Positions 1,647 through 13,600 of a stretch of DNA of 64,000 nt are shown one piece after another. Under the pieces are notes generated by a model. That model did no database searches. It was not told where the DNA came from and was given only the letters and a program-made list of their open reading frames with translations. This DNA comes from Ylistrum balloti. Lineage: Eukaryota. Position numbers and translations under genes: made by a program. Location: contig NW_026782351.1 in the NCBI RefSeq assembly GCF_031769215.1, forward strand, positions 1 through 64,000, in the 5' to 3' direction. The number at the start of each line of letters is the position of its first letter. The stretch's first letter is position 1.

Positions 1647-4600
1647 CTGTGGTTCCTCTTTGAACTTCTTGATAACTCTTTTCAGCATGCGTGTCTTTTT
1701 CTTATCTGGATATCCAGCATAAGTAAGAAGAATTCTTCCAAAATCTTTTTCCTGGATCTTCCCATCCTCAGGATCATAACGGTCAAACTAAACAAAGAGA
1801 TTATGTGGGTTTACTAATGTTGCTGACACTTCTTTACAATAGTAGTTATAAGTCTTTACAAAATGAACTCATCAATCTGAAACATTTTCAGAATGAAATA
1901 ATAAAAGGTATCTATAAAAATTAACATTTTTTTACCAGTGACAATAGCATCTCACTGCTGGAAGTATTACTATTTGTGTTCACATTCCATTCCAAAATCC
2001 CATCTACTTCTGTAGTACTTTATGTGTATCACATGTTTAAAATGACTTTGATATATGGTGTGCAGATCAAGACTTTGCCATGGTTCTTCAAAGCTGACAG
2101 TTGTGAGAGATGTATATACATGTATATAGATACATATATCATATATAAATATTAAGACAGCAGAGACAAAGTACACTGCAGCCAGTAGTACGACAGAAAT
2201 GTTGAATATCCTCATCTGTTTTATAGGTACAAACAATCCTGGACTAGAAAGGGTTCAAACTATCACTTGACAGAAAATCATTGCTTTTACTGAAAAAATC
2301 ACGTGTTTGAACTGCCTGCCTATTCAAATTGACCAGACTTAACTTTGATTTCTGTCTTAAAATGATGCCAAACTTTCTGTTTGTCAACCATTACGATTTT
2401 GGTAGAACTAGGGGAAAAATGTATATTAAATGAATGCATTAGAACTGTAAAATCAAGCTTTCCAGTAAGTGTTATCATACATCTTACATAAATTGCAGGT
2501 GTATTCATTACATACACCTTAATCTATGAAAAAAAAAACCTAGTGTTTGTTAAATGAAATACATGTAACTATCAAAATAGGTAGGTTGTTTGTGATAACT
2601 CATATAAATCTGTTATGTCCCCAATGCCCAGGGCTACCTGTAAGAGGCCTAGTCTATTGTCTACTATATGTATATACTGTCTCCCCGGAACCTGCAGGTT
2701 GGAAGGGATTAGTGGTCGTGACATGACACTAATTGTTAATTGGGTTGTATTTTTACCTGGATAAGTCTGATGACCATTATTACCCATATTACATAAATGA
2801 CTACTATCCTCTCATTTTCACTAAGATTTGACAAAATGTGACATTGGCAACTGCTGGTGTGAACCTGTGAAGCACTGTAGGACACTTCCATCCATGAAGA
2901 GTATTTGGTACTACTTTATCTACCTATTGAGAAGATGATTTTTGAAATTTCAGTTAATTTGAACCATTTTTGGACCTGCCAATCAGCCCTAATGGGTCAG
3001 TCGAGGTCAATAAATATATCTCCTAAAACTAATTCTAACCAAATTTAAACGATTTCAAATAGAAAATAAACAAATTATGTTAAAAATATAATTTTTCTTT
3101 ATAACTATTTGACTTTTTCATATATTAAATCACAGTAAACTCCCCAGGGAAAATGTGAGACCCTGGGTTGATGAATTTTACAATTTTGGTTTGGCCTCTG
3201 AAGGCCTTTCCATCAATTAAGAATAGTTGATTCCACCATGCCTTGAAGATTTCAATCAATTTCACTATTTTTGTATAACATTTGCTTGTCTCATAGCCAT
3301 TGCATGCATGCTTAACAATGTTTTGAAAGATTGTTTATAGCATACATATGCTGCTAGGGGTGTGGGAAACTTTTAACCAATCAGAGAGCTAAGATTGGTA
3401 GTAACATCTACTTCTTGGGGCTGTGTCGACAGGCTATAACTTCATCCATCCTATCTGAAAATTAAATACCCAATAAAGGCTCCTGAAATATCAAAAGAAT
3501 GAACATGTTTAACAAAATCAATATGGCATGGCCACTCATTTAAGATCCTTTATGTACATCAGTGAGGTGTTCACTTGCCTCGATTCTGAGCACTTCATTT
3601 TGAACCTGTTGTTGGAAGGCAAGAAACACTGGTACGGTCAGCTTCTTTTTTCCCTCTGGTCCAAAAAAGTAGGTGACCAAAGCTGAGCTCACACCCTTCA
3701 TGACATTCCCAGTTACAGCATGGTCACGGTGACGCATGCCTATGCTAGTCTGGTTACGGATTATCTGATGGACCTGGAAATTCAAAATTGTACAATCCTT
3801 TAATATCGACAAGTAGAGGTCACAGACTGATCCAAACAAGTGGTTGCATTGTGTATCAGTATCTAATGATTCTCCAAGTTTCTTAACATAGTTTCAGAGG
3901 TTTTAAATCTTGGTTTATGTTCAAAACAAAAACAAAACAAAAAAAAATCCTCAAAGAAAAATAATTTTACTGAAGGTTTTCCTTGTTTGCTAATCATGTA
4001 TTTGGTCATATTAATGACAAAAGATGTTAAAATACTGATTGGTAAATGAAGGAATAATGTTTTATGTTACATATATGTTGTGTCCGATATGTTTATGCAT
4101 ATTTCACCCAGTCTGTTTCTTATGTTACTTACAGCAATGAACATGATAGTTGTTAGAATAAATTGTGTGGAAGATAAGCAAATACTTAAAGACTACAGGC
4201 ATTAAAGATGTTTTCAAAAATAAGTTTTTTTAAAATAAAAAGTTTCAGTTATGCTCCAGACATGAAATTTTAATAAAGAACCATAACTGTGATTATGGGG
4301 TTGCAGGCCCTGACTTCAGAGACATGTATCTATGACATCATGTCAAAACAACATGAATAGTTACTAGGCAGTCATAGAGATTATATAATAAGATCAATGT
4401 ACATGCCAAGGTTCACCATCCTAGTTTCAACGCAAGCCAGACACAAAATTTTAACAAAGGGCAATAACTCTGTAGTGCAAACACATAAATGGCCAAGTAT
4501 GTCAGAAATTCTGTATATCAACCTTGTGAAATTCCTCAACATCCACATTGCCATCTCCATCTAGATCAAACATGCGGAAAGCAATTTGAAAATTCCTGGG

Positions 4601-7600
4601 CGGTGCTGTAATCAGAAAATATTCTAACTATATTGTAAGCAAGGATTTTACATCATACAAATATACATCACATTATCAGTAATGCAGTTACATTTGTTTG
4701 CGACACATTCATTAACCTTGAAATACATTGGGTATACTGTGGAGTCTTATTGCCCTCGAAAGATTTATAATTGCCAAATGTGATCTGTGTTTCAACAGAT
4801 GATGCATGGCTTTCAAACTCTTTCTTGTATCTGTTCACCCACACTACATTCGTTGTTCATGAATTTAAAAACTTACTAGAAGCTGTGTACAGAGAAGTAT
4901 TGAGGTATGGTGATGACCTATTGTATGTCAGTCTATCATACCTACAGCTATGTACTAGAGAGGTATGGTGATATTCTACAGTAATTTCGTCTATCATTCC
5001 TTTTGCTGTGTACAGAGAAGTATTGAGGTATGGGAATGGTCTTTGTAATCTCATATTATTGATAATTTACTTACTTGACAAGACAGTAAGAAGGAATATG
5101 TAGTCAGAGAAGGAAATGAGGCCACTCTCCCCAAGCTGATAGAAGATGCTATCCTCTCCCATCTTCCATTCTGCTTTGTTGTGCTGGATATATCAAACAA
5201 AACATCAATAAGGAGCTCAAGTTAACACTAAAAGCCAGAACCACACATTCTAGTTTTACTGGATTTTCAGCATTATTCCAAAATCAAACTTCATTTAATT
5301 CTGAATTAAGCAGAAGTCTTGAATATGATAATGTGGAGAGGATGTAACATATAGCTTACCAGGTGAAAAATTATTTCATATTTCTCATTACTTGAGTCTA
5401 ATAATAATAATAAAAAAAATGTAAATAAATAAAATCATTTATGACATTATCACCCAGTCCTCTTTCTTGCACCTGTTGTTTTGGTGATGATTAGTTAAAA
5501 TACAGCAATACAACACTCTGTATGACAAACAATTTTCATGTCAAACAGATAGGTGAGGATTTGAGTGAGGGAAATATTTATAAGAAACAGTTATAACTTG
5601 TATTATGACACATGACTTTATGGAGGAGTCAGTATCAGTATGGTTTTCCCTATTTTGTTAACAAGGAACTGCGGTATAAAAAATCTGTATCACACATCAC
5701 ACAAAATTAATGGCTAGAGTACTACAAATGTTCTGATACGATACAATGTATGTAAATGTTACAGACAGTTCTTATAAAACAGGATAATAAAGAATTTAAC
5801 CGGACATATAATGTCATCTGGTAGTAATTGGGGAGAAGGTAAACACGAAGGGCAGTGAAGATTCAATCTGTAGGGCAGTGCAAATTAGGTATAACAATGA
5901 TAGAAAGAATCAAAGATGAAGGATAGAGAAGTCATTGTCTATACAAATGATAGTAGTCAGTCAGGTGAGATTTTGTGTTCGAAAGAGACTTGAAGTGTTT
6001 TGAATAAAAACTACAGTAGTTAATGTCTTGAAGTAGTCTAGAGAAGTGAGTGACTGAGAGAGGACTACAGTGGTTAATGTCTAGGTGTAGTCTTGAGGAG
6101 TAAGTGACTGAGAGAGGACTACAGTGGTTAATGTCTAGGTGTAGTCTTGAGGAGTGAGTGACTGAGAGAGGACTGCAGTGGAGTTAGAATCTGAGAGAGG
6201 ACACTGCAGTGGTTAATGTCTGGGTGTAGTCTAGAGGAGTAAGTGACTGAGAGAAGACTGCAGTGGAGTTAGAATCTGAGAGAGGACTGCAGTGGTTAAT
6301 GTCTGGGTGTAGTCTAGTGGAGTGAGTGAATGAGAGAGGACTGCAGTGGTTAGTGTCTGGGTGTAGTCTAGAGGAGTAATTGACTGAGAGAGGACTGCAG
6401 CGGAGTTAGAATCTGAGAGAGGACTGCAGTGGTTAAGTGTCTGGGGTATTCTAGAGGAGTGAGTCACCGAGAGAGGACTGCAGTGGTTAGTGTCTAGGTG
6501 TAGTCTAGTGAACTGAGCAACCGAGAGAGGACTACAGTAGTTAGTGTCTGGGGGTATTCTAGAGGAGTGAGTCACCATGAGAGAGGACTGCAGTGGTTAG
6601 TGTCTTGGGGTATTCTAGAGGAGCGAGTCACCAAGAGATCTGCAGTGGTAAGTGTCTAGGGGTATTCTAGAGGAGTGAGTCACCAAGTGGACTGCAGTGG
6701 TTAGTGTCTAGGGGTATTCTAGAGGAGTCAGCTACTGAGAGAGGACTGCAGTGGTAAGTATCTGGGTGTAGTCTAGAGGAGTGAGTCACTGAGAGAGGAC
6801 TGCAGTGAAGTAAGAGTCTAAGAGGGAACTGTTGTGGTTAGTGTCTTGGGTTGGTCTAAGGAAGTGAGAGTCAGAGAGGACTGCAGTGGTTAATGTTTAG
6901 GGTTAGTTTATAGAAGTGAGAGAGAGAACTGAAGTGTCTGGGGTAGTCTAGAGAGGCAAGTCTGCAAAAGGACTACAGCAGTTCATCTGGAGGTAGTCTA
7001 AAGAAGTGAGTAACTGAGAGAGGACTGCAGTAGTTAGTGTCTGGGGAGAGTCGAGAGAAGGGAGAGGATGTTGATTTATGAGGGTTGTCAAGAAGGGTGA
7101 GAGTATGAGAAAGGACTGCTTTAGTTAGAGTTTTGGGATAGTCTAAAAAAGTGAGTGACTGACTGAGATAGGACTGCTGTGGTTTTTGTCAGGGGGTAGT
7201 CTAGAGAAGTGAGTCAAAGATGACTTTTGTGGTGTAGTGTCAGGGGCTAGTGAATACAAGTGTCTGAAAGAGAATAGTGAAATTGTGACTTTATGAGTGT
7301 TAGAATCTATAGATATTTCTCTCAATATATACCATATGTTCACTGTGTCAAAGATATAGGGAAGAAGATCAGAGAATACCTGATACCTGTGATCTCTTTG
7401 ATACAAAATAAAAGTATGAAATGTAAACATAAAACAGCATGATGGAATAATCAATTGCATTTGATTGGACTATAAACAGGCAATTAAAAAAAACCGCTAT
7501 CAACCTTGAAAGTTTTTCAAGAACAATAAAAATGTCTTAATGTGAACTTTTAGATTTCACCATGATTATATCAGATATATTTCTGTGGTGCAAATAAAAC

Positions 7601-10600
7601 AGGTAGACCCGAGTAGATTGCATTATTTCTGGATGACTAGTGTAAGTGTCTGTGTAGTCTGTTGATAAGGTTTAGTTTTAATAGTACATGTTACAAGACA
7701 CAGGTAAGATACTGATATGTAGGGGGCAGAATAAAAGAGTAAAGAACAGTCAAAAAAATGACTTTAACAAAGACATCAAACGTTGGGAAAGTCAAAGAAG
7801 GGTCTGTATACAATACTGGGTAGTCTAGAGGATATACAGCCAATGAAAAACAAAAAATCTTTATTCATTCAAACTGCTAGGGTATACTAAATTGTTACTG
7901 TGGTATTTCAAATTCTATACAAATTAAGAATGAATGTTGAACAATTTGAGAGCTATATGTGGCAAATACTGTTTCGTATCTACCATATTGTATATATCAT
8001 GAATGACTTACTGTAGGAAAAGAATTCTTTAAATATCAATGGTAGAAATGAAGACAGTTGAATTCTTTTTATTTCCCATTAATCATATGCAATCAAATAC
8101 AGATTCTTATCATCTATCTTATCCAATGGTCAGTCAGTCAAGATTTTACAGTGATAATTGTAATACAAGGAACACTTTATTTACATACTGAAAAGATGGA
8201 TCTTGTGTATGTAATTAATTCCCTTTAATAATAAAAGCAAACAACAAACCTGTCACTCAATCTAAATCTAAGGATGTATTTCATTCAAATAAACCAGGTA
8301 ATTTTTTAAACCTGGAGTATTAGTGGGGAGAAAAAAGGAAAAATATATGTACACCTTCATAAATAACTGTTTACATAATGCTTTACACGAGAAGTAGACA
8401 ATATCAAATTCAATTGGAAGACATTAACAAGAAGAAATGAAAACACACTTTTAAAAATAAATTGAATGGATTATATCCTCATCGACTTAAAAAATGAGAT
8501 CTGCCTACTTAGGAGGGATCTTAACACTTGTTAAGGAAATCAAATGACTCCCGTTTTGGAAAGTAAGGATAATTACCACTGTACAATTACATACTTATCA
8601 ATAGTTTAGAATAACACTCTATGTCTCTAATGAGAAAAAATATATTTTAAAAATGTGCAAGCATGCAATAAGTTGTGAAAAAGGAATGACAGAAACTTTC
8701 AAACACCAACAATCAATGAAATTTGCTTAAAATAAAAAAAAAGAGAAAATTGTACAGAAAATCTCATACCGTTTATTCAAAACAATTTACTATTGGCTAG
8801 TTGTAGCCAGAAAAAAGTAGATTTTTTCTCTAAGCTTTGTCAATTAAAGAGATATTCAATTCAATAATGAAACTAACCTGTTACATATTATAGAAAAATC
8901 TGTCATCCCAGGTTGTAAAGACTCATGGCAAACCGTGCTGTCTACGAAGTTGTATAACTGTACTTATTAACCAAAATGTATCCTCTTTTGTCCCATTGTA
9001 CATCATATTGACATTTAAGGATGTAGAAACCAAAGAAAGGGTGAGTTAGGAAAGAGGGAAGGCTTGTGGGTGATTTAGAGGTAAGATATGTAGGTCATGG
9101 TGAGCAGTGTACTAGATATGCCCCAGTAATGCTTATAAGTTTGGCAAAGGAACTTCTCAAAGTGGTAAAGGTTTCATAGAAAAACATTATATGTCCATAA
9201 TTTGTTTGAAATTTTACACAAACATTTCTCTCACCATCCATAATAATTACATGTACAAGAAATGACATGACAGATAGTTAGGTATAATCATTCATCCTTA
9301 TTTTTTGTAAACTACAGCATCTTTATTTATTTTCCTTTTTAAAAAAAATCAGACACATCAATAGTAAAATAAAACTCAGTAAAATTCAAGAGGTTATGCC
9401 AGGTATGTAGTGTATTTATAGCCATGTAATCTAAAATTTAACTGATCAAATCAGAATACTTACTGAATTTTTAATGAATAAAAGATATAACAGGTCACAT
9501 GACTTGTTTAGAAAATGACAAAGTAATATAGACCTCCAATGAATTGTCATTCTGGTAGAAAATCTTTAATTGTATACGTGTGTATTGTAAACCATATAAC
9601 CAAGTCATCACATGTACATGTTAAATGATACAGCATATAGTGTTCTTTCTGACATAATATTTCATATGTGTTAAAAGTATGTAATTCTGATTAATAATTA
9701 AACAACAAAATCAATACTAGTAACAGGTCAATAATCTAATGCTGCAAGAAGAAAATAGAACTTCACCAGTTAAAAAGAAAATGTGAGGAACACAACTGGA
9801 TTAGCCAAGTATTCTTTTCTTTTTAGTAGGCTATAGAATCATTAACAGTGTCAACAACTCACCTTTGACCCCTAAAGGAATCAACAAAACAGAACAATAT
9901 GTCAATCTAAATTGCACTTCTATTCAAATATATATTTTAAATGTTGATATGATCAGTTATAGTCGTAACTCATAATTCAACCTCTTCTCAGCAGCAGTGC
10001 TGCTAGTCCTCTTAGTTGGGTATAAAACAGACAAATACAAGTCCTTTATCAAAACAAAAACTTCCAGGAATGGTACTGAGGTTTGACATCTTTGTTATTA
10101 TTAACAACATTTTGGAGGGGGGGTTGGTATTTTTGGGATTGGGTGGGGAATAATATGCATGCATTTTGCAAGCACAAGATTAATTCATTAAAATTTGATA
10201 ATTTCACTTGTCACTGTATTTTACAGTGATAAATACATTTATGAAATTGAAAACATGTTACAGTTTAACAAGCACATCCCTTTTTATGACCTTGACCTTG
10301 TGCAATGTTTCAGAAGAAATTGCAAGGCAAATCATTCATATATTCTATCAACTTTTTAATATTGGACTTGTATTCAAAGATTTGTCAGGATCATTCAGAC
10401 TAGCAACTGACCTTGACCCTTGGACTGAGAGTGTTATGTGGTATACAAGCTTGTGTAAACCATTATTGTTATTATTGGGAGTAGGGTAGGGATGGAGGGG
10501 TATCATAAAAGACCAGTTTTAATGGAGAGGCAACAGTTGGCTTGCACAAACATTGAGCAGTGCTTTGGAGGGTTCAAACAAACACTTTAAAAGTAGTAAA

Positions 10601-13600
10601 GGAAGACCAAGAGAGAAATTAATTTAGAGTTGCTATTTGGTAAACTAACAACAATTATCTTTTGATGTTATTTTGGAAAGTTAGGAATACATATCATTAG
10701 GACAACTTGCTTATTTAGATAAGAGAGATTACTCTTTTTCACCCATCATTTTAAGCATTTCAGTTTATCAGCTTGGAGGATATAACAACACGACAGGAGA
10801 GTATATACACAAACACATATATGTGACCAGCATTAAGTATGTTAAACATCATAAAATGTTATATAATATATCACTGACATATACAAGAGGTAGGTGTGGG
10901 ATACAAAACTTCCGATATCGTTATTGCTAGTTCAATGTGGTATTACCAAATAACCCAATCTTTCCATATTCTGATTAAACCGTACAGCCTGAAACAGATT
11001 ATCACCGCAAATATCTTATAAAAGTGCTCCACAATTCTAACGGTGAATTATTTAATTTATTGTAAAATCTATAAATAATAAGCAAACCTAATCTAAGAAC
11101 TGAAAGCTTGGCACTGCTTCCTATCTACAGCTGAGTATGCTAAGGGTCCAAAGAGGAAAATATGTAATAATATGTACACAAAAGATATACTGATGCATAC
11201 AGAATGGTAATATCCTGAACATCATTAACACTTACAATTTAAAAAAAAAAAAGAATAAATTTTCATAATAAAAAAAATTGCAAACAAATATAAATGAAGA
11301 CCAAAGCAATAAGTTAGTATACATATACTGTAGGTTTGAAGAACCATTACTGTTATTAGTAGTTGTAAGTAGGCTACAGTCACCAATCACCACTTACCAA
11401 GCTGTGCACATCGTCCTTCTACAGGCAGTGTTGACAGATAGAGAGTAAACATCAAAGTCTAATATACACAAATGGTACACACTCCCCTAAAGCCTGGTGA
11501 ACTACTGCTTTCTTTAACTACACTTCAATAATGTCTCAATTCATTTTCGACTATAGCACAATTCTTCAATGAAGAAAATAAAATCCTTGAAACATCTAAG
11601 TAATACAAGAATCATGGAGAAAAAGACAGCCTTTTCAATACGTACATGTATGTTTGCATGTGTCCATCACATCATAATATTTGACACTGAATTATGACCA
11701 TATAATACAATCTGAAAGTCTCTTTACCAACCTGAGCATTGATCTTCCCTATACATGCAGATGTTTAGTTTAGGTGAATCACAGAAACCAATGCTTACAA
11801 TACACATATCTCCAAATACATGAATAACTGAAATATTTATGCCAATTTTTAAGCATGTATTCTATAAAAATATGGGTAAGCTCACAGTTTAATGACATAT
11901 GATAAAAGTGAAGAAAAATCTAGCTTTTACATCATTCCTCCATTTAGAAAAAATAATAAATAAATAAAAACTGATTTCCAGCAAAGTCAGCATATGTTAC
12001 TCCTACTGTTTGTTTCTATCTGTGATAAACGTAGTTCAAATCTACCTCCCTTGGAATATTATATTGAAGTCCTTACATTAAGCCTTCCTTAAAGATATGA
12101 CATTCAACTGTATGAAACCAGAACTAAACCTTGCCTCAAGTTATCACAAAATTCTACAGTTTCAGTATCCTATAAGAGTATCTAGATGATTAAGTATGAC
12201 AGCTACAGGTATTAGAATGGTTTAGTAGTACACTATAGTAATAAACCAATGTATAGATATAACAACACATACTGTCATAAACACAAAGCATTTACTTGAC
12301 CTTCCAAAATATATTTTCATGTTAAAATGTACAAAAGTTAATTCTAGTGACACTATGATTAAAAAGATAGGTTCAGAAAATTTTACAACAGTTTTGGTGA
12401 TTTTTAACTGGAAACCATAATTCCTTATGTAGGATAGTTATATCCTAATGCATTAAAAGTTGTCAAATAGATGTGTAGCAGTGTGGGTTGTTATCAGTAT
12501 GTTTACACACAGACAACCTACAGAAGCTGAATCCTAACCAACCACCAGACCTGTACAGATTATGGTTGAAGTTACATACCTGGGGATCAAACTTCATGAA
12601 CTGGTCTAACCCCAAACCTAACAAGAAAACACATATTATTTAGTATAAATCATGTGCATATTACCTATAACATATAACAGAATGGACAGATATGATACTG
12701 TTATCATTTATTTTTCTCCTTTAAAATCTTAATTAATCTAGTTTAATAAACAATATTCTAGACCTTGCAAATACTGGTTATTCTATCTATAATTTTTCAG
12801 TGTGTTTTGAGTTAGTTTGAGACCATAATTTCACAATTGTCTTTCTGTTTGGTCAAAGAAATGATTCATTTTATCAGGGTTGTTTTACAAGATTAAGAAA
12901 GGATTAAAGCAACAGATAAATTCTATGCTTGGTAGGATCTAGTAGAAAATGTAGTTTATTACAGGTTATGGTAAAGTTTGAAACAGTCTTTCCTTCATAG
13001 TTTCTGAAACACCATGAGTTCCTCAATACTGTGGATATTTAACTAGAATATACCTTAGCAGTTTAATTTTGTAACAAATTTTATTTCCTTCCTCTCCCTT
13101 ACATTATTTCTGTTTTTGCAAAAGTTTACCTGTAACTAAAGTAATTGCTGTCAATTATCCGAGCCAAAAAATAATAATACAGTGGAAACAGCTTAATATC
13201 ATGTTCCATTTATCAGGGGGAATTGTGGTAATATGAGTGATGTGACATTAATAGTTGACACATTTTTTCTGACGTCTAATCATGACATTTAACTTTCAGA
13301 TGCACCAACTAACTTGTCTCTAACAGAATAGTTTGAAGACAAAAATTTGTAATTTGATTGGTCTTTTCCCGTAAAAAGAGTGATTTTCCTTTACATTCGT
13401 TTGTTTATTCTTTAAAATGTCTAACCTGCTATCATAAATTATCGTGAACAATTGTGTTATATTTACAGTTTACACATGGTCAAAATTTTACTTGACACTA
13501 CAGTGTCATCAGCTGATATTTTGCCACATGATTCATCCATCCATTACTGTGTAGGCTTCACAGCATCTCAAAGTGGATGTTCATACAGTGTGTACCTCTG

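What the first reader, a model, noticed from the sequence alone, without database searches (positions are those of the whole stretch)
9863..9871. MICU1 9-nt micro-exon candidate (GSK)
Seen: a long U-rich tract ending ttcctttAG, then GGG TCA AAG and a strong AAG|GTGAGT donor. It preserves the frame alone or combined with the 21-nt exon. UGCAUG (RBFOX-type) motifs lie on the transcript strand near 10160 (upstream) and 8662 (downstream). Inference: combinatorial micro-exon splicing could yield several MICU1 loop variants, and the Ser/Lys could be modifiable.
Basis: partly seen in the sequence, partly recalled or inferred. Interest (0 to 1): 0.7.

Follow-up and report, generated by a model that had tools for sequence, protein, structure and literature searches.

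The report
Real 9-base MICU1 micro-exon in scallop
The 9-base stretch is almost certainly a real, optionally used mini-exon that adds Gly-Ser-Lys to a flexible loop of the scallop mitochondrial calcium sensor MICU1; sister scallops already list it in public protein variants, so it fills an annotation gap here and is not a discovery.

Summary
On the minus strand, ...ttcctttAG|GGGTCAAAG|GTGAGT lies at 9863-9871, in the 7.4-kb MICU1 intron between exons 12580-12617 and 5075-5183. The window is Ylistrum balloti (saucer scallop).

On its own the motif is weak: about 20% of shuffled introns give such a candidate. Comparison with other scallops settles it.
- A 21-base run (AG, the 9 bases, GTGAGTTGTT) is invariant in four scallop genomes, where only about 31% of flanking columns are invariant.
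- RefSeq isoforms X1-X8 of Mizuhopecten yessoensis and of Pecten maximus are exactly the eight combinations of three cassettes: 7 aa (KDDVHSL), 14 aa and 3 aa (GSK).

So GSK is cassette C of a three-cassette module. It lies in the same loop as the vertebrate MICU1.1/1.2/1.3 micro-exons.

The public Y. balloti model has only the 21-nt cassette and lacks GSK. No RNA run was available, so use in this species is inferred.

Of the two UGCAUG motifs, only the downstream one (8662-8667) is conserved, in a four-species island. The motif is not enriched in the window.

The scan had already followed up the neighbouring 21-nt exon on this window (s1-240684), but not this one. Novelty is low and interest modest.

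The parts
9863..9871 (-). Cassette C: 9-nt micro-exon GGG TCA AAG (Gly-Ser-Lys), phase 0-0
   Evidence: Sequence. Identical 9 nt in P. maximus L001:11634-11642, M. yessoensis L002:10780-10788 and A. irradians L003:15428-15436. GSK is present in RefSeq isoforms X1/X3/X5/X7 of two scallops. It is the only AG+GSK+GT site in the intron of each species.
9872..9899 (-). 3' splice site (AG 9872-9873) and U/GU-rich polypyrimidine tract; UGUUUUGUU (9883-9891) is invariant in 4 species
9853..9862 (-). 5' splice site GTGAGT plus TGTT, part of the 21-base invariant run 9853-9873
   Evidence: The longest invariant run is 21 columns; the next longest is 9.
9801..9807 (-). Invariant UGGCUAA block about 55-60 nt downstream of the donor; candidate intronic splicing element with no assigned factor
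   Evidence: invariant columns T174-A180. The function is inferred only.
8640..8700 (-). Conserved intronic island about 1.2 kb downstream, holding invariant UUGCAUG (8662-8668), GCACAUUUUU (8649-8658) and UCUG.CAUUCC (8683-8693)
10947..10988 (-). Cassette B: 42-nt exon ([14 protein letters not shown]), tgtttcAG...GTAATA; not in the public Y. balloti model
   Evidence: Orthologous 42-nt exons occur in 3 other scallops and in RefSeq isoforms.
11398..11418 (-). Cassette A: 21-nt exon (KDDVHSL); in the public Y. balloti model P0283
   Evidence: earlier finding s1-240684.
12580..12617 (-). Upstream constitutive MICU1 exon (..[13 protein letters not shown]), donor CAG|GTATGT
5075..5183 (-). Downstream constitutive MICU1 exon ([36 protein letters not shown])
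   Evidence: (human MICU1 structures, E 4e-9 to 1e-7).

Best explanation
9863-9871(-) is a genuine alternatively included cassette micro-exon of the scallop MICU1 gene. It is the third and smallest (C) of three phase-0 cassettes in one long intron: A is 21 nt, B is 42 nt and C is 9 nt. Each can be included or skipped independently, which gives eight loop lengths (+0 to +24 aa) between the N-terminal domain and the first EF-hand of the mitochondrial calcium-uniporter gatekeeper. Shown here: the sequence, its strict purifying selection together with its splice sites, and its presence in public predicted isoforms of two sister species. Inferred: a 9-nt exon is too short for ordinary exon definition, so it relies on its near-consensus donor (AAG|GUGAGU), the conserved GU/U-rich tract and conserved intronic elements. 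These may include the distal UGCAUG island, which would point to RBFOX-type control. Inclusion adds a flexible, positively charged Gly-Ser-Lys spacer to a disordered loop. By analogy with vertebrate MICU1.1 (EFWQ in the same loop), this would shift Ca2+ affinity or the uniporter activation threshold in particular tissues.
For: Gene identity: the exon 5075-5183 matches human MICU1 structures. The window's exons match Ylistrum balloti XP_060076662.1 at 100%. Conservation: AG+GGGTCAAAG+GTGAGTTGTT is invariant in Y. balloti, P. maximus, M. yessoensis and A. irradians, while only 31% of the other aligned columns are invariant; fewer than 1e-6 such runs are expected per intron. Annotation: the isoform lengths 531/534/538/541/545/548/552/555 (M. 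yessoensis) and 533...557 (P. maximus) equal the base length plus {0,3,7,10,14,17,21,24}, and the alignment shows GSK as an independent cassette. Each species has a unique genomic source for GSK. Loop context: in the AlphaFold2 model of isoform X1, residues 223-270, including GSK at 261-263, have pLDDT below 50. Precedent: human MICU1 has two micro-exons in the same intron (5' EFWQ and 5'' TE), used in combination as MICU1.1/1.2/1.3 and driven by RBFOX2, and EFWQ raises Ca2+ affinity (PMC8909990). UGCAUG at 8662-8667 lies in a four-species conserved island. The same A-B-C order occurs in oyster (24/45/15 nt), and there are multiple cassettes in mussels.
Against: No RNA-level evidence could be obtained for this species. 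The only public run holding the locus is DNA. The public Y. balloti model and the A. irradians models lack GSK. The two full-length Logan transcript-derived Argopecten-like proteins (P0326, P0328) skip all three cassettes. A fragment-level protein search found no transcript fragment containing GSK. RefSeq XP_ isoforms are predictions, and I could not inspect the evidence behind them. The functional effect on Ca2+ sensing is pure analogy. The conserved UGCAUG lies 1.1-1.9 kb away, further than typical RBFOX enhancer distances, and the motif is not enriched in the window.
Confidence: 0.86

Rival explanations
1. The element is conserved, but it works as an intronic splicing-regulatory decoy or pseudo-exon. 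It would bind U1/U2AF to influence choice among cassettes A and B and the long downstream intron, and would rarely or never end up in mature mRNA. The RefSeq GSK isoforms would then over-interpret rare reads.
For: The two full-length transcript-derived proteins found (P0326, P0328) skip it. Neither the Y. balloti nor the A. irradians models include it. All third codon positions are invariant, which fits RNA-level constraint as well as it fits coding constraint.
Against: Two independently annotated genomes list it in four isoforms each, in every combination. It preserves the frame with no stop codon. A 9-nt exon cannot be called without spliced reads (my knowledge of NCBI's Gnomon pipeline, not checked here). 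Oysters and mussels have small third cassettes in the same place.
Confidence: 0.08
2. The exon is functional in other scallops but no longer used in Ylistrum balloti: the sequence survives but regulation is lost.
For: The single public Y. balloti model lacks it. The window shows some lineage-specific changes nearby, including a T insertion polymorphism at 9809 and CUAAU in place of CUAAC.
Against: The exon, the AG, the polypyrimidine core, the donor and the distal island are all intact in the window. The Y. balloti annotation has only one partial isoform, so its absence there says little.
Confidence: 0.05
3. A chance pairing of splice-site-like motifs in an AT-rich intron.
For: About 20% of shuffled introns give at least one comparable candidate.
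Against: A 21-base invariant run in four species against a 31% background, and the exact GSK insertion in public isoforms.
Confidence: 0.01

Closest known systems
GSK cassette in RefSeq MICU1 isoforms of Mizuhopecten yessoensis (XP_021348918/21/23/25) and Pecten maximus (XP_033740709/25/42/53)
   Same: Identical 9 nt, identical splice sites, the same intron and the same order after the 21-nt and 42-nt cassettes.
   Different: Not present in the public Ylistrum balloti model (XP_060076662.1) or in the Argopecten irradians models. These are computer-predicted isoforms, and my searches found no paper describing them (the mollusc search was swamped by its own terms).
Vertebrate MICU1 micro-exons 5' (EFWQ, 12 nt; MICU1.1) and 5'' (TE, 6 nt; MICU1.2/1.3)
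   Same: The same loop and the equivalent intron (after ..FDGK / ..FDPQ and before the exon encoding ..[18 protein letters not shown]). Several tiny phase-0 cassettes are used in combination. A UGCAUG motif is conserved in the intron, and in mammals the splicing is RBFOX2-driven (PMC8909990).
   Different: No sequence similarity to GSK. Vertebrates have two cassettes and scallops have three. Tissue pattern, regulator and biochemical effect are all untested in molluscs. Common origin versus convergence remains open.
Oyster cassette C (CLQTK/CRQNK, 15 nt) and mussel small cassettes (DPRV/EPKV, MSKMKK)
   Same: In the oyster, the third and smallest cassette lies in the same A-B-C order and ends ..CAAAG|GT just before the constitutive exon. 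The mussel cassettes lie in the same intron, and DPRV/EPKV was not located in the genome.
   Different: Different length and residues. Homology with GSK is suggested only by order and by the shared ..CAAAG 3' end. Intron alignment at that evolutionary distance was not attempted.
Bilaterian neural SRRM4/eMIC-dependent micro-exons
   Same: Size class (27 nt or less), frame preservation, strong flanking intronic conservation and a surface-loop location.
   Different: No conserved UGC motif within about 40 nt upstream of the acceptor; only P. maximus has one. This hallmark is therefore not met.

Membership tests
Alternatively spliced cassette micro-exon | Length of 51 nt or less (typically 27 or less), a multiple of 3, with no stop codon | tested here: met
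   9 nt encoding GGG TCA AAG, phase 0-0.
Alternatively spliced cassette micro-exon | Functional-looking 3' and 5' splice sites that are conserved across species | tested here: met
   yAG and GTGAGT are invariant in 4 scallops, and the polypyrimidine-tract core UGUUUUGUU is invariant.
Alternatively spliced cassette micro-exon | Both inclusion and skipping seen in mature mRNA | tested here: inconclusive
   Both forms exist among RefSeq predicted isoforms of two relatives. No RNA run was reachable for this genome, and no transcript-derived fragment with GSK was found.
Alternatively spliced cassette micro-exon | Raised conservation of the flanking intron | tested here: met
   A conserved block of about 460 nt (66-68% identity) surrounds the exon in otherwise unalignable intron, with a peak from -55 to +95.
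Ortholog of the pectinid MICU1 GSK cassette | The same gene, the same intron, the same order relative to cassettes A and B, and the same peptide | tested here: met
Homolog of vertebrate MICU1 exon 5' / 5'' | The same intron position in MICU1 | tested here: met
   The insert lies between ..FDPQ and HNKAEW..DSIFY, as EFWQ/TE lie between ..FDGK and KISQ..DSIFY.
Homolog of vertebrate MICU1 exon 5' / 5'' | Sequence similarity of the exon | tested here: not met
   GSK compared with EFWQ/DFWQ and TE. No EFWQ-like exon occurs on the MICU1 (minus) strand: the only two 3-mismatch matches are plus-strand, outside the gene region, and no more than chance.
Homolog of vertebrate MICU1 exon 5' / 5'' | RBFOX-dependent inclusion | not testable with these tools
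   The only indication is a conserved UGCAUG 1.1-1.9 kb downstream.
SRRM4/eMIC-type neural micro-exon | A conserved UGC motif close upstream of the 3' splice site | tested here: not met
   No UGC within 40 nt upstream in 3 of 4 species.
Recursive splice site / RS-exon | A 5' splice site regenerated directly at the acceptor (AG|GTRAGT) | tested here: not met
   The acceptor is followed by GGGTCA, so joining any upstream exon end gives ..G|GGGTCA, which is not a donor.

The most novel reading that the evidence does not exclude
The A-B-C cassette module and its conserved distal UGCAUG island form an old, RBFOX-type-controlled 'rheostat' for the Ca2+ threshold of the mitochondrial uniporter. It would be either shared between molluscs and vertebrates since the bilaterian ancestor or have evolved repeatedly at the same MICU1 loop. 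GSK would be its finest step, switched on in fast striated adductor muscle and/or neurons. This would make scallops a natural eight-state system for studying how loop length tunes MICU1 gating.
Probability: 0.2. Interest if true: 0.6.

Novelty: new member of a known kind. Interest (0 to 1): 0.32.

Why it matters
For this genome it corrects the annotation. The public Y. balloti MICU1 model carries one of three cassettes, and exons of 9 nt and 42 nt are missing.

More broadly, the MICU1 loop that carries the muscle and brain micro-exons in mammals is a multi-micro-exon hot-spot in scallops, oysters and mussels. There are also lineage-specific inserts in crustaceans and insects. In scallops the three cassettes give eight isoforms.

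In mammals, four extra residues at this loop change Ca2+ affinity by about tenfold. The molluscan series therefore offers a natural set of loop lengths for testing how the loop sets the uniporter threshold. It also offers a test of whether RBFOX control of this event is ancient.

The individual GSK exon is already in public predicted proteins of sister species, so by itself it is confirmation, not discovery.

Tried and rejected
- **RNA evidence.** The look-up of sequencing runs (kind rna) returned only one run, X1. Laying it showed contiguous genomic contigs at about 10x, so it is DNA with no splice information.
- **Transcript fragments.** A fragment-sized protein search with P0270:195-300 looked for transcript-derived pieces carrying GSK. 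None came from scallops. A blank here says little.
- **EFWQ-like exon.** A search of the window found no candidate: only two 3-mismatch plus-strand matches outside the gene, no more than chance.
- **RBFOX enrichment.** TGCATG is not enriched. The upstream motif at 10158 is not in any conserved block and has no counterpart at that distance in the other species.
- **'RNA bridge' between the UGCAUG island and the exon flanks.** Only AT-rich, low-complexity inverted repeats turned up, for example 8635-8650 with 9923-9938. I rejected these as uninformative.
- **Repeat or transposon origin of the exon flanks.** There is no second copy in the window.
- **Recursive splicing and SRRM4-type architecture.** Both were considered and not met (see the membership tests).
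- **Oyster locus via isoform X3.** It is not on record, so I used the longest C. virginica isoform instead.
- **Literature on mollusc MICU1 splicing.** Nothing specific was found.
- **Joined model.** I did not build or search a joined spliced coding sequence of the window. Exons were searched one by one by reference, and full-length comparisons used public proteins.

Full report
**What is there.** One search shows, on the minus strand...gttttgttgattcctttAG|GGGTCAAAG|GTGAGTtgtt. The 9-nt unit is at 9871..9863. It lies in a 7,396-nt intron between two MICU1 exons:
- the exon ending ...[12 protein letters not shown] at 12580;
- the exon starting [36 protein letters not shown] at 5183.

The second exon matches human MICU1 structures at E 4e-9 to 1e-7. 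Stop-to-stop translation and tblastn lay out the rest of the gene on the minus strand: 16913-16566, about 15143-14982, 14744-14574, 12617-12580, 5183-5075, about 4615-4520, 3773-3579 and 1787-1647.

**Is it more than chance?** By motif alone, barely.
- Only one stop-free site in the whole window (both strands) fits AG + 3n nt + GTRAGT with a pyrimidine-rich upstream tract.
- About 20% of dinucleotide shuffles of the intron nevertheless produce at least one.
- TGCATG is slightly under-represented in the window, at 35 observed against 41.6 expected.

The case therefore had to be made by comparison with other genomes.

I checked this independently:
- An exhaustive profile search with the 65-aa exon 3579-3773 returned full-length MICU1 representatives.
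- A word search with one of them returned the RefSeq clusters of Mizuhopecten yessoensis and Pecten maximus.
- A loop-restricted search added Ylistrum balloti and Argopecten irradians.
- The partial Y. balloti protein XP_060076662.1 (P0283) matches the window's exons at 100%, for example 116/116 in exon 1.

The window is therefore Y. balloti.

**Annotated isoforms in relatives.** Each of the two RefSeq clusters has eight isoforms.
- Their lengths are 531, 534, 538, 541, 545, 548, 552 and 555 aa in M. yessoensis, and 533 to 557 aa in P. maximus.
- These equal a base length plus {0, 3, 7, 10, 14, 17, 21, 24}, which is every combination of 3-, 7- and 14-residue inserts.
- The alignment shows the inserts directly after ...FDPQ: KDDVHSL, then GKLFNKNLERLGYR (TKQFNKNMEKLGYP in P. 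maximus), then GSK, then HNKAEWK.
- GSK occurs alone (X7), with A (X5), with B (X3) and with both (X1).

One cassette was missed. In the window the 42-nt exon lies at 10947-10988 (tgtttcAG|GCTGTACGG...TATTTG|GTAATA, encoding [14 protein letters not shown]).

The public Y. balloti model contains only KDDVHSL. The A. irradians models contain A, or A plus B, and are truncated by intron read-through. None of these has GSK.

**Genomic conservation.** I fetched the orthologous loci of P. maximus (L001), M. yessoensis (L002) and A. irradians (L003).
- BLASTN of the intron finds only a few alignable islands. One spans cassettes A and B (about 79% identity over 700-800 nt). Another spans the 9-nt exon (66-68% over about 500 nt).
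- In the four-species alignment the run AG-GGGTCAAAG-GTGAGTTGTT (21 columns, window 9873-9853) is invariant.
- The next longest invariant runs are 9 columns (UGUUUUGUU in the polypyrimidine tract, 9883-9891) and 7 columns (UGGCUAA, 9801-9807).
- Outside the 21-column run only 31% of columns are invariant. A run of that length is expected about 1.5e-7 times per intron.
- In each species this is the only AG + Gly-Ser-Lys codons + GT site in the intron. It must therefore be the source of GSK in the RefSeq isoforms.
- The DNA run X1 confirms the window sequence across the exon.

**Regulatory motifs.**
- The downstream UGCAUG (8662-8667) lies in a conserved island (about 8640-8700). There, UUGCAUG, GCACAUUUUU and UCUG.CAUUCC are invariant in all four scallops.
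- This island is 1.07-1.2 kb from the donor in three species and 1.9 kb in A. irradians. In P. maximus it holds the only UGCAUG in the 11 kb of downstream intron.
- The upstream UGCAUG (10158-10163) lies in unalignable sequence and has no positional counterpart.
- No conserved UGC lies near the acceptor, so the SRRM4/eMIC hallmark is absent.
- The site is not a recursive splice site.

**Protein context and likely mechanism.** I modelled isoform X1 of M. yessoensis with AlphaFold2, using a 34-sequence alignment.
- Residues 223-270 have pLDDT below 50. This covers the whole cassette region, including GSK at 261-263.
- The region lies between the N-domain and the helix that leads into the first EF-hand. 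It is best read as a flexible surface loop, with a low-confidence helix over cassettes A and B.

In mammals the same loop takes EFWQ (exon 5') and TE (exon 5''), in the combinations MICU1.1, MICU1.2 and MICU1.3. Their splicing is driven by RBFOX2, and EFWQ raises Ca2+ affinity and lowers the activation threshold of the uniporter (PMC8909990).

My inference is that in scallops the three cassettes grade loop length and charge. GSK would be the smallest step, a flexible, basic spacer of three residues, and would tune MICU1 gating in particular tissues. The step from sequence to function is analogy only. Phosphorylation or other modification of the Ser or Lys remains untested.

**Wider pattern.** Loop sequences of about 150 MICU1 proteins, together with the isoform sets of oysters and mussels, show that this loop repeatedly hosts cassettes:
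- oysters: TGDFKQIL / SEDFKQIL (A), KKKILTVPRLCRLKV (B) and CLQTK / CRQNK (C);
- mussels: KDDFRTL, MSKMKK and DPRV / EPKV;
- decapods: SAEE;
- vertebrates: DFWQ / EFWQ and TE.

In the Crassostrea virginica locus the genomic order is A (24 nt), B (45 nt), C (15 nt, ending ..ACAAAG|GT) and then the constitutive exon. This is the same layout as in scallops, where C ends ..TCAAAG|GT. Whether oyster C and scallop GSK are homologous is open.

**What could not be done.**
- No RNA run is served for this locus.
- The two full-length transcript-derived scallop proteins found (P0326, P0328) skip all three cassettes.
- A fragment-level search found none with GSK.
- Expression of the exon in Y. balloti is therefore inferred from conservation and from the predicted isoforms of relatives.
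- I built no joined spliced model of the window. Exons were searched singly by reference.

**Verdict.** The exon is a real pectinid MICU1 micro-exon, cassette C of three. It is unannotated in this genome but already present in the public predicted proteins of two sister species. I found no paper that describes it, though my mollusc-specific search was uninformative. Novelty is low: it is a new, unannotated member of a known kind. Interest is modest and comes mainly from the three-cassette, eight-isoform architecture and from the conserved UGCAUG island.

Noticed in passing
window 10947-10988 (-): A 42-nt cassette exon B ([14 protein letters not shown]) lies between the 21-nt and 9-nt exons. 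It is absent from the public Y. balloti MICU1 model. It is conserved in 4 scallop genomes and present in RefSeq isoforms of M. yessoensis, P. maximus and A. irradians X3. Its end residues vary, unlike the invariant GSK.
   Followed up: yes
window 8640-8700 (-): An intronic island is conserved in four scallops, with invariant UUGCAUG, GCACAUUUUU and UCUG.CAUUCC. It is a candidate distal splicing enhancer for the cassettes. In P. maximus it holds the only UGCAUG in the 11 kb of downstream intron.
   Followed up: partly
window 3573-3578 (-), donor of exon 3579-3773: This exon ends GAG|GCAAGT, a GC-AG intron, in Y. balloti. The same junction is GT in P. maximus (GTATTT) and M. yessoensis (GTAAAA).
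   Followed up: partly
window 6010-6922: A tandem array with a period of about 54 nt (up to about 7 copies per block, 74-91% matches) lies inside the MICU1 intron. It accounts for the strong G skew (0.45) and higher GC of the 6-8 kb bin, and on the minus strand it gives long spurious ORFs ([18 protein letters not shown]...).
   Followed up: partly
P0283 and P0321 (Ylistrum balloti public proteins) against window 3881-1647: Two partial public Y. balloti models, on different contigs (1.05 Mb and 4.04 Mb), both match the same window exons at 100%. P0321 starts in intronic sequence. The gene therefore appears split or duplicated (haplotig?) in the public assembly.
   Followed up: no
L003 (Argopecten irradians) and proteins P0284, P0322, P0323, P0320: The A. 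irradians MICU1 models stop by reading into the intron after ..LLTVLS. The 3' half is called as a separate protein on another chromosome-scale contig. This looks like an assembly or annotation problem.
   Followed up: no
L005 (Crassostrea virginica) 3905-3928, 5997-6041, 8315-8329; L004 (Mytilus californianus) 9332-9352, 9595-9612: Oysters and mussels carry their own sets of 2-3 small cassettes in the same MICU1 intron, in the same A-B-C order in the oyster. Decapods, insects and vertebrates also show inserts at this loop. It is a recurrent micro-exon hot-spot that, as far as my searches went, is not described for invertebrates.
   Followed up: partly
window 9801-9807 (-): An invariant UGGCUAA block about 55-60 nt downstream of the micro-exon donor in all four scallops (CUAAY core). 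No factor has been assigned to it.
   Followed up: no
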